A stretch of DNA of 64,000 nt, from contig NC_083288.1 of NCBI RefSeq assembly GCF_963506605.1, positions 29,202,001 to 29,266,000 of the forward strand, written 5' to 3'. The translations under genes and the position numbers were made by a program. A model generated the notes under the pieces. That model ran no database searches. It was not told the origin of the DNA and saw nothing but the letters and a program-made list of their open reading frames with translations. Positions 46,341 through 49,300 of this stretch are shown here, piece after piece. Position 1 is the first letter of the stretch. Each line of letters starts with the position of its first letter. This DNA is from Zootoca vivipara. Taxonomy: Eukaryota.

Positions 46341-49300
46341 TCCACCCCCCTCCCAAGCTCTCCTTCACCCCTCCCCAGGCCCCCCCCATGTGTCGGTGAC
46401 GACTGGAAGCCTAAGAACTCAGTGCTCTCCGAGCCCGTTGGTGTGAATACCTCCCCCCAGTCCTGCGAGCCCCCCCCTTCCGCCTGGGCGGACGGGAATC
46501 CCAAAAAGTCCGTGGCGTCAGAGCTGGTGGGGGTAAAAACGTTCTGCCAATCTGCTCCTTCCTCTGACTGGGTGGATCTCGGTGACACCCATACCTCATC
46601 CTCTGGTTCCTCAAACTCCGCTTCCCAGCGCCATGGTGAGCTGCTCTCCCGTGCCTCCTCCTCCTCCCCCTCCCTTTCCATGTGCCAGGGCTTGGGTCTG
46701 TGGGGAAAGAGGGCGTGAAATTCTTCCACCAAGAATTCCTCCTGTATCTGAGTGGCTGGGACCCATTCATTCTGGGACGGTGGAGCATCCTCCCATGCCA
46801 TGAGGTACTCCAGTCCCCCCACCCCCCACCTTGAATCCAGGATGGCCGTGGCCTCATTGAGTTGCTCCCTGCCTTCCCTCTCCCCCCCTCCCTCGGGGGT
46901 TTGTTCGCTGTCTCGGAGCCTGCTGCTTTCCCTGTACGGCGACAGCAGCGATCTATGAAACACTGGATGCACCCTCATGTCCTCTGGCAGTGCCAGCCTG
47001 TATGCCACCGGGTTTACCTGTTGCGTGACCGTGAAGGGGCCCAGCCTTTTGGGTGCCAGCTTTTTGCACCTCCCTCTGGTGGGAAGGCCCTCCGAGGACA
47101 ACCACACCTTGTCCCCCACCCTGATGACCTCCCCTTGTCGCCTGTGGCGATCTGCCCCCTTTTTGTACGCTTCCTTGGCCCTCTCCAAGTGGTCTCTGAG
47201 CTGCTGGTGCACCGTCTCCAGTTCCTCTGCCCAATCCTCAGCCTGTGGGCCCTCCTCCTCCTCCTCCTCCCTCTCCCTCTCTGGGAAAGATCTGAGGTCG
47301 CGCCCGTAATTGGCCTTAAAGGGCGACACCCCTGTGGAGACGTGCACTGCATTGTTGTAGGCAAATTCTGCTAGTGGCAAGCGATCCACCCAGTCCGTTT
47401 GCCGCTGGCTGACGTAGCATCTCAGGTACTGCTGCAGAATGGCGTTGACCCTCTCCGCTTGTCCGTTGGTCTGCGGGTGTCTAGCCGTCGACAAGCTGAC
47501 CTCCACCTGCAGGAGGTTCATGAGCCGCCGCCAGAACCTGGAAACAAAGTGGCGGCCACGATCCGAAATAACCCTTAAAGGTAATCCATGCAGTCTGAAA
47601 ATGTGATCAACAAACAGTTTGGCTGTCTCTTCTGCCGAGACTGCCCTGGCACACGGTATAAAGTGACACATTTTGGACATAAGGTCCACCACCACCAACA
47701 CTGCAGTCTTACCCCTGGACGAAGGCAGATCTGTGATGAAGTCCATGGACACCACTTCCCACGGCCTGTGTGGTGTGGCTAAGGGCTCCAGCAACCCTGG
47801 TGGCGCTGCTCTGACCACCTTCGCCCGCTGGCAGGTGGTACAGCCCCTTACATAGTCTCGAACATCTTCCCGCACCCCTGGCCACCAGAAGTGTCTCATG
47901 ACTAGGTGAGCGGTTTTGTCCCTTCCAAAATGCCCCGCTGTAGGGTTGTCGTGCATCTGCTTGAGGACCGTACGTCGAAGCTGGGTGGTGGGTAGGTACA
48001 GCGCACCCTTGTAGAAAAGCAGCCCTCTGCGTTCTGCAAAGTCTTTTGCCTGCTCCCTCCCCCCTCTCAGTTCTCTGAAGATGCGGTTGGCAAATTCATC
48101 CGCTGCCGTCAGTGCTGTGAGTTCTGCCTCGCTCACCACAGCTGCTCCGCAGGACCATGCCGACGGGGGGAAAATGTGCCTTGGGGCTGGTGGCGCCTCC
48201 TCCTCCATGTACTCTGGCTTGCGGGAGAGGGCATCCGCCCTGACATTCTGCTCCCCCGGGATGTAGTGGATGGAGAAGTTGAAGTTCGAGAAGAACTCTG
48301 CCCACCGTATCTGCCGCTGGTTGAGCACCCTGGCAGTTCTCCAGAACTCCAGGTTCTTGTGGTCTGTGCACACCTGGATGGGGTGCTTCGCGCCCACCAG
48401 GAAGTGTCGCCAGTGCTGGAACGCAGCGTAGATCGCAAGAAGTTCCCTATCAAACACTGTGTAGTTGCGTTCAGGCTGTGTCAGCTTCCTGGAGAAGAAG
48501 GCACAGGGTCTCCACTCCCTGTTGGCGTCCAGTTGCAACAAAATTGCGCCCACAGCTTTTTCAGAAGCATCTGTCTCAATGCGTAGGGGCGCGTCCTGCA
48601 CCACATGGAACAGGTTTTGGTCTGAGGCGAACACTCTCTTGAGGCTTTCGAACGCTGCTTGCGCCTCTGGTGTCCACTTGAACTTCTGCTTGCCTCTCAG
48701 GCAGTCCGTGATGGGAGCCGTAACGCGAGAGAAGTTCTTGATGAACTTCCTGTAGAAGTTAGCGAAGCCTAGTAGGCGTTGGGCATCTTTGCGCGTCCTG
48801 GGGCTGTGCCAGTCCAGGATGGCCTGCACCTTGTCCTTGTCCATCGCCAGCCCCTTGTCTGACAGCTTGTAGCCCAGGAAGTCCACCTCTTTGGTGTGAA
48901 ACTTGCACTTCTCCAGCTTCACATACAGGTGGTTCTCCTTCAGGCGTTGCAACACCTCTCTGACATCTTTCACATGCTGCACTGGGTCATTCGAGTAGAT
49001 AAGGATGTCATCTAGGAAGACCAAGCATTTCCTGAAGAGGAGGGACCCCAGGACGTGGTGCATGAAGGCCTGGAAGCATGCTGAGCCCCCTTGCAAACCG
49101 AAGGGCATCACCAGATATTCAAAAGAGCCCAGAGGCGTGAACATCGTGGTTTTCCATTCATCTCCTTCCCGGATCCTGATCAAGTTGTACGCCCCCCTTA
49201 GGTCCAGCTTGGTGAAAATCTTGCCCCTGCGTGCCGCTGTCAGGAGATCATCCACTCTGGGCATGGGGAAAGCCACGGGCTCTGTCACCGAATTCAGCCG

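What the first reader, a model, noticed from the sequence alone, without database searches (positions are those of the whole stretch)
46406..46552. Retrotransposon integrase carries two tandem LEDGF/TND-binding-like motifs (..VF-x9-FLGF): candidate new integration-tethering system
Seen: after the chromodomain, Pol continues into an acidic Ser/Thr-rich tail with two 19-aa repeats 30 codons apart, DWQNVFTPTSSDATDFLGF (46552-46496) and DWGEVFTPTGSESTEFLGF (46462-46406). The copies differ at many positions but keep DW, VF and FLGF, which suggests selection on the peptide. Known: partners of the LEDGF/p75 (PSIP1) and HDGFL2 integrase-binding domain and of related TFIIS N-terminal domains (JPO2/CDCA7L, POGZ, IWS1; MLL1 for the FxGF part) use a motif of short helix hydrophobic-xx-hydrophobic-F, a roughly 8-10 residue acidic, phosphorylatable linker, and FxGF. 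HIV integrase uses the same LEDGF domain through a different, structured surface. Inference: this vertebrate Gypsy lineage may mimic that host motif to tether its integration complex to LEDGF/HDGFL2 or other elongation factors, converging on the lentiviral strategy. I am not aware of this being described for an LTR retrotransposon.
Basis: partly seen in the sequence, partly recalled or inferred. Interest (0 to 1): 0.92.

Follow-up and report, generated by a model that had tools for sequence, protein, structure and literature searches.

The report
LEDGF-partner-like motifs in lizard retrotransposon integrase
An intact, very young lizard Ty3/Gypsy retrotransposon carries two conserved short peptide motifs at the end of its integrase that match the published signature of host proteins binding the chromatin tethers LEDGF/HRP2, so it may choose insertion sites the way HIV does but by copying a host motif; binding itself is untested.

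Summary
Pol residues 1174-1192 and 1204-1222 (46496-46552 and 46406-46462, minus strand) are two 19-residue repeats. They share 13 residues, and 11 of those 13 shared codons differ synonymously.

The host element (45913-51725) is an intact chromovirus with identical 428-bp LTRs and a 5-bp target duplication. It sits in an olfactory-receptor gene cluster.

The motif is [W/F]xxΦF, then an 8-9 residue linker (42% D/E, 36% S/T), then FxGF. It recurs in every related squamate element whose tail is visible: several Podarcis families and a chromodomain-less Anolis family. It is absent from 253 other Gypsy integrase tails surveyed. In nine aligned second-slot copies, only W, F and F-G-F are invariant. 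The surrounding tail is predicted disordered.

This matches the published three-part definition of TND-interacting / IBD-binding motifs. Unexpectedly, the lacertid elements that carry the motif have lost two or all three aromatic-cage residues of their chromodomain. A sister family with an intact cage lacks the motif.

Binding to LEDGF/HRP2, and any effect on integration, remain inference. No description of this was found in the searched literature. Verdict: a real, selected motif, and a plausible new variant of integrase tethering.

The parts
45913..51725 (-). Complete Ty3/Gypsy LTR retrotransposon (5813 bp), the only copy in the window
   Evidence: LTR pair 100% identical. TG..CA ends and a flanking 5-bp duplication. 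gag and pol ORFs are intact. No other copy or solo LTR in the window.
51298..51725 (-). 5' LTR (428 bp)
   Evidence: Identical to 45913-46340. Starts with TGTGAGG and ends with TGTGACA.
45913..46340 (-). 3' LTR (428 bp); it also encodes the last ~100 codons of the Pol ORF
   Evidence: The Pol stop codon is at 46037-46039, inside the LTR.
51726..51730 (-). Target-site duplication GATTC, upstream copy
   Evidence: Read directly from the sequence.
45908..45912 (-). Target-site duplication GATTC, downstream copy
   Evidence: Read directly from the sequence.
50029..51279 (-). gag ORF (capsid-like domain and CCHC knuckle)
   Evidence: Pfam Retrotrans_gag 2e-16 and Ty3_capsid 3.8e-12. It overlaps pol by 43 nt, and pol is in the -1 frame.
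46037..50071 (-). pol ORF, 1344 codons: protease, RT, RNase H, integrase, chromodomain, tail
   Evidence: Pfam RVP_2, RVT_1, RT_RNaseH, Integrase_H2C2, rve, SH3_Tf2-1 and Chromo.
46931..47986 (-). Integrase: zinc-binding domain, catalytic core and SH3-like domain (Pol 696-1047)
   Evidence: Pfam matches. The SH3-like domain is modelled with high confidence.
46715..46852 (-). Chromodomain (Pol 1074-1119) with a degenerate aromatic cage: N, W, A at the positions of HP1 Y24, W45, Y48
   Evidence: Pfam Chromo 27.2 bits against a 25.1 cut-off. HMMER alignment to HP1 chain 1kna_A. Cage survey.
46388..46714 (-). Acidic, Ser/Thr-rich tail of Pol between the chromodomain and the polypurine tract; mostly predicted disordered
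   Evidence: Translation. One acidic helix is predicted at Pol 1129-1143, and pLDDT is below 50 from about Pol 1160 onward. No Pfam family matches here.
46496..46552 (-). Motif copy 1 (Pol 1174-1192): DW..VF, 9-residue S/T/D linker, FLGF
   Evidence: Equivalent motifs occur in relatives.
46406..46462 (-). Motif copy 2 (Pol 1204-1222): DW..VF, 9-residue S/T/E linker, FLGF. It corresponds to the second motif slot of relatives.
   Evidence: In the anchored alignment of 9 relatives only W, F and F-G-F are invariant.
46583..46633 (-). Possible third, degenerate copy (Pol 1147-1163): a W.W...F stretch and acidic run, but no FxGF
   Evidence: Seen in the translation. It resembles the start of the second slot of P0017. 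Not tested further.
46341..46387 (-). Polypurine tract directly upstream of the 3' LTR, translated as a Gly/Arg/Glu-rich stretch
   Evidence: Sequence.

Best explanation
The two repeats are short linear motifs under selection in the disordered C-terminal tail of the retrotransposon's integrase. Most likely they copy the host TND-interacting / IBD-binding motif.

Proposed mechanism:
- The [W/F]xxΦF part folds on binding into a short helix and sits in the first hydrophobic pocket of the TFIIS-N-terminal-type domain of LEDGF/p75 (PSIP1) or HRP2 (HDGFL2).
- The acidic, phosphorylatable 8-9 residue linker lies on the basic patch.
- FxGF fills the second pocket.
- Two motifs per integrase, and several integrases per intasome, would give multivalent attachment to these H3K36me-reading proteins. 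That would steer integration towards transcribed chromatin.
- This tether appears to have taken over from, or to supplement, a chromodomain that has lost its methyl-lysine cage.

Shown here: the motif, its conservation, its spacing and composition, its disordered context, and the cage loss. Inferred: the partner, the binding mode and the effect on integration.
For: 1. The motif is exact and non-random.

2. Selection acts on the peptide. Eleven of 13 conserved codons differ synonymously between the two copies, and dS is saturated.

3. Conservation against a fast-changing background:
- All 19 proteins with FxGF downstream of the integrase SH3 domain belong to one squamate clade. The other 253 proteins surveyed have none.
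- In nine aligned second-slot copies the only invariant columns of 42 are W(-14), F(-10), F(0), G(+2) and F(+3).
- All 23 linkers are 8 or 9 residues long, with 42% D/E, 36% S/T and 2% K/R.

4. Fit to published definitions:
- Obligate short helix with F/V/L/I anchors, 8-16 residue acidic S/T/G-rich linker, and FxGF that is essential for LEDGF and HRP2 (PMC9987994).
- Consensus D/ExExFxGF. MLL1 uses F129 and F133, spaced i, i+4, plus F148-L149-x-F151 (PMC8022399).
- S/ExFxGF, and the DPF3a peptide with LF, a 10-residue S/T/acidic linker and FHGF (PMC7337902).
- JIL-1 DFxGFDE binds the fly LEDGF homologue (bioRxiv 10.1101/624023).
- Several relatives match D/ExExFxGF exactly.

5. Context. The integrase C-terminal tail is predicted disordered. 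Tandem motifs also occur in JPO2, ASK and IWS1 (PMC9987994).

6. Lacertid elements with the motif have 0-1 cage aromatics (one has 2). Anolis elements with the motif have no chromodomain. The sister Podarcis family P0283 has a strong chromodomain and no motif.
Against: - No binding or integration data exist.
- Short motifs can serve other partners.
- Profile and single-sequence searches of the PDB with the motif did not retrieve LEDGF-peptide entries, although such searches are weak for short motifs.
- AlphaFold2 predicts no helix at the [W/F]xxΦF part in isolation.
- In the window copies, the -2 position before FxGF is Thr, not Glu or Ser, and the linker is at the short end of the published range.
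- The association with cage loss rests on one or two evolutionary events, so it is not statistically independent evidence.
- This copy lies between olfactory-receptor genes, which is not an obvious germline-transcribed gene body.
Confidence: 0.5

Rival explanations
1. The motif is a TND-interacting motif, but its partner is another TND protein of the elongation machinery (TFIIS, Elongin A, IWS1, PNUTS/PPP1R10 or MED26) rather than LEDGF/HRP2. This would tether the intasome directly to elongating RNA polymerase II complexes.
For: The helix plus acidic linker are the obligate parts of all TIMs, and different TNDs read different variants (PMC9987994). The motif has these parts.
Against: FxGF is optional for other TNDs but essential for every known LEDGF/HRP2 partner (PMC9987994). 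Here F-G-F is invariant, which points to the LEDGF/HRP2 type.
Confidence: 0.12
2. The motif is a selected short linear motif for a different purpose. Options include an acidic-hydrophobic activation-domain-like contact with another host factor, a nuclear import or trafficking signal, or an intramolecular or inter-subunit contact that regulates integrase or Pol processing.
For: Acidic tails with W/F residues bind many partners. Selection on the peptide does not name the partner. The PDB searches gave no link to LEDGF complexes.
Against: An invariant glycine, strict 8-9 residue spacing and the two-anchor layout are not explained by generic acidic-hydrophobic stickiness, but they are explained by the two-pocket TND mode (PMC9987994). 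A separate basic, NLS-like stretch already exists at the C-terminus.
Confidence: 0.3
3. The repeats are a neutral tandem duplication or a by-product of a DNA or RNA signal near the polypurine tract, with no function as a peptide.
For: The second copy lies only 65 nt upstream of the 3' LTR. The region is GC-rich and repetitive in composition.
Against: The copies are only 65% identical in DNA, with synonymous changes in 11 of 13 conserved codons. The motif is kept in many divergent elements while its flanks are unalignable, and in an Anolis family with a different tail. Shuffles rarely reproduce it.
Confidence: 0.04

Closest known systems
Cellular TND-interacting / IBD-binding motifs of LEDGF/p75 and HRP2 partners (MLL1, JPO2, POGZ, IWS1, ASK, MED1, DPF3a; fly JIL-1)
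   Same: The three-part layout matches: a hydrophobic mini-helix with aromatic residues at i and i+4, an 8-9 residue acidic Ser/Thr-rich linker, and FxGF. The disordered context and tandem copies also match. Several relatives match D/ExExFxGF exactly (PMC9987994, PMC8022399, PMC7337902, bioRxiv 10.1101/624023).
   Different: It is carried by a retrotransposon Pol, not a host regulator. Trp is the usual first anchor. The linker is fixed at 8-9 residues. The window copies have Thr at -2. Binding is untested.
Lentiviral integrase binding to LEDGF/p75
   Same: The proposed outcome is the same: the integrase is tethered to the same host domain, and so to H3K36me-marked transcribed chromatin. The HIV integrase site on the IBD overlaps the site used by the FxGF part of MLL1 (PMC8022399).
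   Different: By established knowledge, lentiviral integrase uses a folded catalytic-core dimer surface. Here a disordered peptide that copies the host ligand would be used.
Short tethering peptides in other integrase tails (MLV integrase C-tail with BET proteins; deltaretroviral integrase LxxIxE-type motif with PP2A-B56; Ty1 with AC40; Ty5 with Sir4)
   Same: A short peptide in or near the integrase C-terminus recruits a host protein. The B56 case is explicit mimicry of a host motif (bioRxiv 10.1101/2020.06.19.161513; PMC7459421 for Ty1).
   Different: The motif class and the presumed partner differ. The MLV and Ty5 cases are cited from my own knowledge and were not checked here.
Chromoviruses: Ty3/Gypsy elements whose integrase ends in a chromodomain that reads heterochromatic histone marks
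   Same: The order gag, PR-RT-RH-IN-chromodomain matches, and the element groups with chromodomain-bearing relatives in the tree.
   Different: Two of the three cage aromatics are lost in the window element and all three in the P0002 family. The Anolis motif-bearing family has no chromodomain. A long motif-bearing tail follows the domain.

Membership tests
TND-interacting motif / IBD-binding motif (LEDGF/HRP2 type) | FxGF core | tested here: met
   FLGF occurs twice in the window. F-G-F is invariant in 9 aligned relatives. FxGF is present in 19 clade members and absent from 253 other tails.
TND-interacting motif / IBD-binding motif (LEDGF/HRP2 type) | Acidic, Ser/Thr/Gly-rich linker of 8-16 residues between the helix and FxGF | tested here: met
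   All 23 linkers are 8 or 9 residues long, with 42% D/E, 36% S/T and 2% K/R. Definition from PMC9987994.
TND-interacting motif / IBD-binding motif (LEDGF/HRP2 type) | Short alpha-helix presenting F/V/L/I-type anchors to the first pocket | tested here: inconclusive
   The sequence pattern [W/F]xxΦF is conserved, with W and F invariant in the second slot. AlphaFold2 on the free chain predicts coil at low confidence. Such helices form on binding.
TND-interacting motif / IBD-binding motif (LEDGF/HRP2 type) | Acidic or phosphorylatable residues at -4 and -2 before FxGF (D/ExExFxGF; S/ExFxGF) | tested here: inconclusive
   The window copies have D/E at -4, Thr at -2 and D/E at -1. P0017, P0158, P0161 and P0275 match fully. 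Consensus from PMC8022399 and PMC7337902.
TND-interacting motif / IBD-binding motif (LEDGF/HRP2 type) | Location in an intrinsically disordered region | tested here: met
   pLDDT is below 50 across both motifs, while the neighbouring SH3-like domain and chromodomain are confident.
TND-interacting motif / IBD-binding motif (LEDGF/HRP2 type) | Direct binding to the IBD/TND that is lost when the Phe residues are replaced | not testable with these tools
   Only single unaltered chains can be folded here. No complex modelling or wet assay was possible.
Chromovirus (Ty3/Gypsy with C-terminal chromodomain) | LTRs, target duplication, gag, and pol in the order PR-RT-RH-IN | tested here: met
Chromovirus (Ty3/Gypsy with C-terminal chromodomain) | Chromodomain after the integrase | tested here: met
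   Pfam Chromo 27.2 bits, just above the 25.1 cut-off. Folded in the model.
Chromovirus (Ty3/Gypsy with C-terminal chromodomain) | Three-residue aromatic cage for methyl-lysine (canonical, HP1-like chromodomain) | tested here: not met
   N, W and A align with HP1 Y24, W45 and Y48. The clade shows NWE, HWE, TWL and NRT.

The most novel reading that the evidence does not exclude
A squamate Ty3/Gypsy lineage changed its integration-targeting device. As the chromodomain lost its methyl-lysine cage (lacertid families), or where it is absent altogether (an Anolis family), the integrase tail gained one or two copies of the host LEDGF/HRP2-binding motif. This would move the element from heterochromatin reading to tethering on H3K36me-marked transcribed chromatin, the lentiviral strategy reached by mimicry of a host ligand, possibly twice independently.
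Probability: 0.3. Interest if true: 0.85.

Novelty: new variant of a known kind. Interest (0 to 1): 0.72.

Why it matters
If the motif binds LEDGF/HRP2, it would be the first LTR retrotransposon shown to use this tether. It would also be the first case of an integrase reaching the tether by copying the host's own disordered ligand rather than through a folded surface.

It would give a natural system, with sister families that keep a canonical chromodomain, for studying how mobile elements switch integration targets.

It would extend the TND-TIM interaction network to genomic parasites.

It could also offer small, portable peptide tags for directing integration to transcribed chromatin.

Tried and rejected
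1. The first word-index protein search, restricted to the tail of the full-length Pol, found nothing.

2. Exact look-up of gag and Pol found neither in the collection.

No DNA of the relatives could be fetched, so codon-level tests are limited to the two window copies, and the source organisms of P0001 and P0017 are unknown.

4. PDB sequence searches gave only chance matches and no LEDGF-peptide entry. I tried the 61-residue tail, a two-sequence profile and one 23-residue copy. I take this as uninformative for such a short motif.

5. Three key papers (Tesina 2015, Sharma 2018, Cermakova 2021) are not held. The motif definitions were taken from a review and from papers that quote them.

I redid the analysis by extracting the stretches from the stored files. 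A profile built from relatives' motif stretches could not be sent to the PDB search, because sub-stretches of protein ids have no reference. That step is left out.

7. Complex modelling of peptide plus IBD was not possible with the single-chain tool.

8. Plus-strand ORFs over the tail and over pol (45981-46715 and 49005-49838) have no Pfam match. I take them to be by-products of the GC-rich sequence.

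Full report
**The element.** The finding lies in a GC-rich island (53-59% GC against about 40% around it). The island is a complete Ty3/Gypsy LTR retrotransposon on the minus strand, 45913-51725.
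- Its two 428-bp LTRs are identical. They begin with TG and end with CA, and are flanked by a 5-bp duplication, GATTC.
- gag (50029-51279) has retrotransposon capsid domains and a CCHC knuckle.
- pol (46037-50071, in the -1 frame with a 43-nt overlap) encodes protease, reverse transcriptase, RNase H, the three integrase domains and a chromodomain.
- Identical LTRs and open reading frames indicate a very recent insertion.
- No other copy or solo LTR is in the window.
- The surroundings are an olfactory-receptor gene cluster. Nothing suggests human origin. The closest relatives are from lacertid lizards.

**The observation.** It is correct to the base.
- Pol 1174-1192 (46496-46552) and Pol 1204-1222 (46406-46462) are two 19-residue repeats, 30 codons apart. 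They share 13 residues and 37 of 57 bases.
- Eleven of the 13 shared residues use different codons. dN is 0.23 and dS is saturated.
- In 200,000 shuffles of the 116-residue tail, two FxGF arose in 0.09% and the full pattern in 0.014%.
- The second copy ends 65 nt before the 3' LTR. A polypurine tract (46341-46387) lies between them. The Pol frame stays open through that tract and for about 100 codons of the LTR.

**Relatives.** A full HMMER scan of 1.84 billion representatives and two word-index searches gave 388 related proteins.
- 272 of them have at least 60 residues after the integrase SH3-like domain. Nineteen of these carry FxGF there. All 19 fall in one squamate clade of the integrase tree (SH-aLRT 94).
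- The lacertid subclade (support 100) contains the window element, several Podarcis muralis families, a P. lilfordi protein and two proteins of unknown source.
- Every member of that subclade whose tail is present has the motif. Members scored as lacking it are truncated before the tail.
- An Anolis carolinensis family (clusters of 46 and 75 members, 46-47% identical) has one copy of the motif and no chromodomain.
- Frog, fish, snake, fungal and algal relatives have none.

**Two motif slots.** The tails align into two positional slots.
- One slot sits directly after the chromodomain and the other about 30-45 residues later.
- Most lacertid families keep both. Some keep one, with the other decayed (for example FEEF, LEGF or MEGF in place of FxGF).
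- The tandem arrangement is therefore old, which agrees with the saturated synonymous divergence in the window.

**What is conserved.**
- In nine second-slot copies aligned on FxGF, only five of 42 columns are invariant: W(-14), F(-10), F(0), G(+2) and F(+3).
- All 23 linkers are 8 or 9 residues long. They are 42% Asp/Glu, 36% Ser/Thr and 2% Lys/Arg.
- Everything around the motifs is too divergent to align reliably.
- AlphaFold2, given an alignment of 27 relatives, models the SH3-like domain and chromodomain confidently. It leaves both motifs at pLDDT below 50, as expected for motifs in a disordered region.

**Comparison with known motifs.**
- The review of TFIIS N-terminal domains defines their ligands as an obligate short helix with Phe/Val/Leu/Ile anchors, an 8-16 residue acidic linker rich in Gly/Ser/Thr that is often phosphorylated, and an FxGF. 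The FxGF is optional in general but is present and essential in every known LEDGF and HRP2 partner. Several partners carry two or three motifs (PMC9987994).
- The consensus is quoted as D/ExExFxGF. MLL1 uses Phe129 and Phe133 in the helix and Phe148-Leu149-x-Phe151 (PMC8022399).
- It is also quoted as S/ExFxGF, with phosphorylation of the Ser raising affinity. The DPF3a peptide has LF, a 10-residue Ser/Thr/acidic linker and FHGF (PMC7337902).
- Fly JIL-1 binds the LEDGF homologue through DFxGFDE (bioRxiv 10.1101/624023).
- The lizard motif has all three parts, with aromatic anchors spaced i, i+4 as in MLL1. Several relatives match D/ExExFxGF exactly. The window copies have Asp/Glu at -4, Thr at -2 and Asp/Glu at -1.

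**An unexpected correlate.**
- Aligned to HP1 (PDB 1KNA), the window chromodomain has Asn, Trp and Ala where HP1 has the cage residues Tyr24, Trp45 and Tyr48.
- Across the lacertid clade the triplet is NWE, HWE, TWL or, in the P0002 family, NRT. P0002 no longer matches Pfam Chromo at all, and the window domain scores 27 bits against a 25-bit cut-off.
- The sister Podarcis family P0283 has a 55-bit chromodomain and no motif. The Anolis family has the motif and no chromodomain.
- This looks like the replacement of one targeting device by another. It rests on one or two evolutionary events, so it is suggestive only.

**Mechanism.** I take the motifs to be mimics of the host ligand that attach the integrase, multivalently, to the TND of LEDGF/p75 or HRP2, and through their PWWP domains to H3K36me-marked transcribed chromatin.
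- The invariant glycine, the fixed spacing and the two hydrophobic anchors are what the two-pocket binding mode requires.
- Shown: the motif, selection on it, its context and the cage decay.
- Inferred: the partner, the binding mode and the consequence for integration.
- Rivals: another TND protein; an unrelated partner or an internal regulatory contact; no function. The last is largely excluded.
- Caveats: there are no binding data. PDB sequence searches with the motif were uninformative. The two genomic contexts seen, this olfactory-receptor cluster and a Podarcis vomeronasal-receptor gene model that contains an integrase fragment, do not point to transcribed gene bodies, though two cases prove nothing.

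**Novelty.** Full-text searches combining LEDGF, FxGF, chromovirus, retrotransposon, transposon and motif mimicry found no report of such a motif in a transposable-element integrase.
- Integrase peptides that recruit host factors are known, for example the deltaretroviral B56-binding motif (bioRxiv 10.1101/2020.06.19.161513) and the Ty1 targeting domain (PMC7459421).
- I therefore rate this as a new variant of a known kind, not a new category.

- Three primary papers were not held.
- Complexes could not be modelled.

Noticed in passing
window 1279-2214, 4723-5655, 11418-12356, 18154-19191, 25649-26587, 33742-34638, 40210-41163, 43834-44784, 58615-59685: The window is an olfactory-receptor gene cluster. 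There are many intact single-exon ORFs of about 310-350 residues. The five that were scanned match Pfam 7tm_4 at 1e-48 to 1e-57. The retrotransposon sits between two of them.
   Followed up: partly
window 55903-56505 (-): A 201-residue ORF has an immunoglobulin C1-set domain (Pfam 1.8e-09). It may be an exon of an MHC-like or other Ig-superfamily gene next to the receptor cluster.
   Followed up: no
window 46037-46340 (-): The Pol frame stays open through the polypurine tract and about 100 codons of the 3' LTR. It ends in a basic, NLS-like stretch followed by an LLCW[KR] peptide. That peptide is also found at the C-termini of P0001, P0017, P0275 and P0282, so this LTR-encoded end may be a real, conserved part of Pol.
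   Followed up: partly
window 46715-46852 (-): The chromodomain has lost two of the three aromatic-cage residues (N, W, A against HP1 Y24, W45, Y48). The related P0002 family has lost all three and no longer matches Pfam Chromo.
   Followed up: yes
window 46583-46633 (-): A possible third, decayed motif copy (a W.W...F stretch plus an acidic run, no FxGF) lies within a ~37-residue insertion, absent from relatives, between the chromodomain and the first intact copy.
   Followed up: no
proteins P0359 and P0362 (Anolis carolinensis, UniRef clusters of 46 and 75 members): A chromodomain-less Gypsy family carries a single copy of the same motif layout (L..IF, 8-residue acidic linker, FEGF) after its integrase SH3-like domain. 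This is either common ancestry with later chromodomain loss or an independent gain.
   Followed up: partly
protein P0006 (NCBI XP_077774286.1, Podarcis muralis): A gene model named vomeronasal type-2 receptor 26-like contains an integrase segment about 70% identical to the window element. It is presumably a retrotransposon fragment swallowed by the annotation, and a second chemoreceptor-cluster context for this lineage.
   Followed up: no
window 50029-50071 (-): gag and pol overlap by 43 nt, with pol in the -1 frame. I noticed no obvious slippery heptamer when reading the overlap.
   Followed up: no
window 51280-51297 (-): The sequence directly after the 5' LTR does not look like the usual TGG-starting primer-binding site. 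The primer tRNA was not identified.
   Followed up: no
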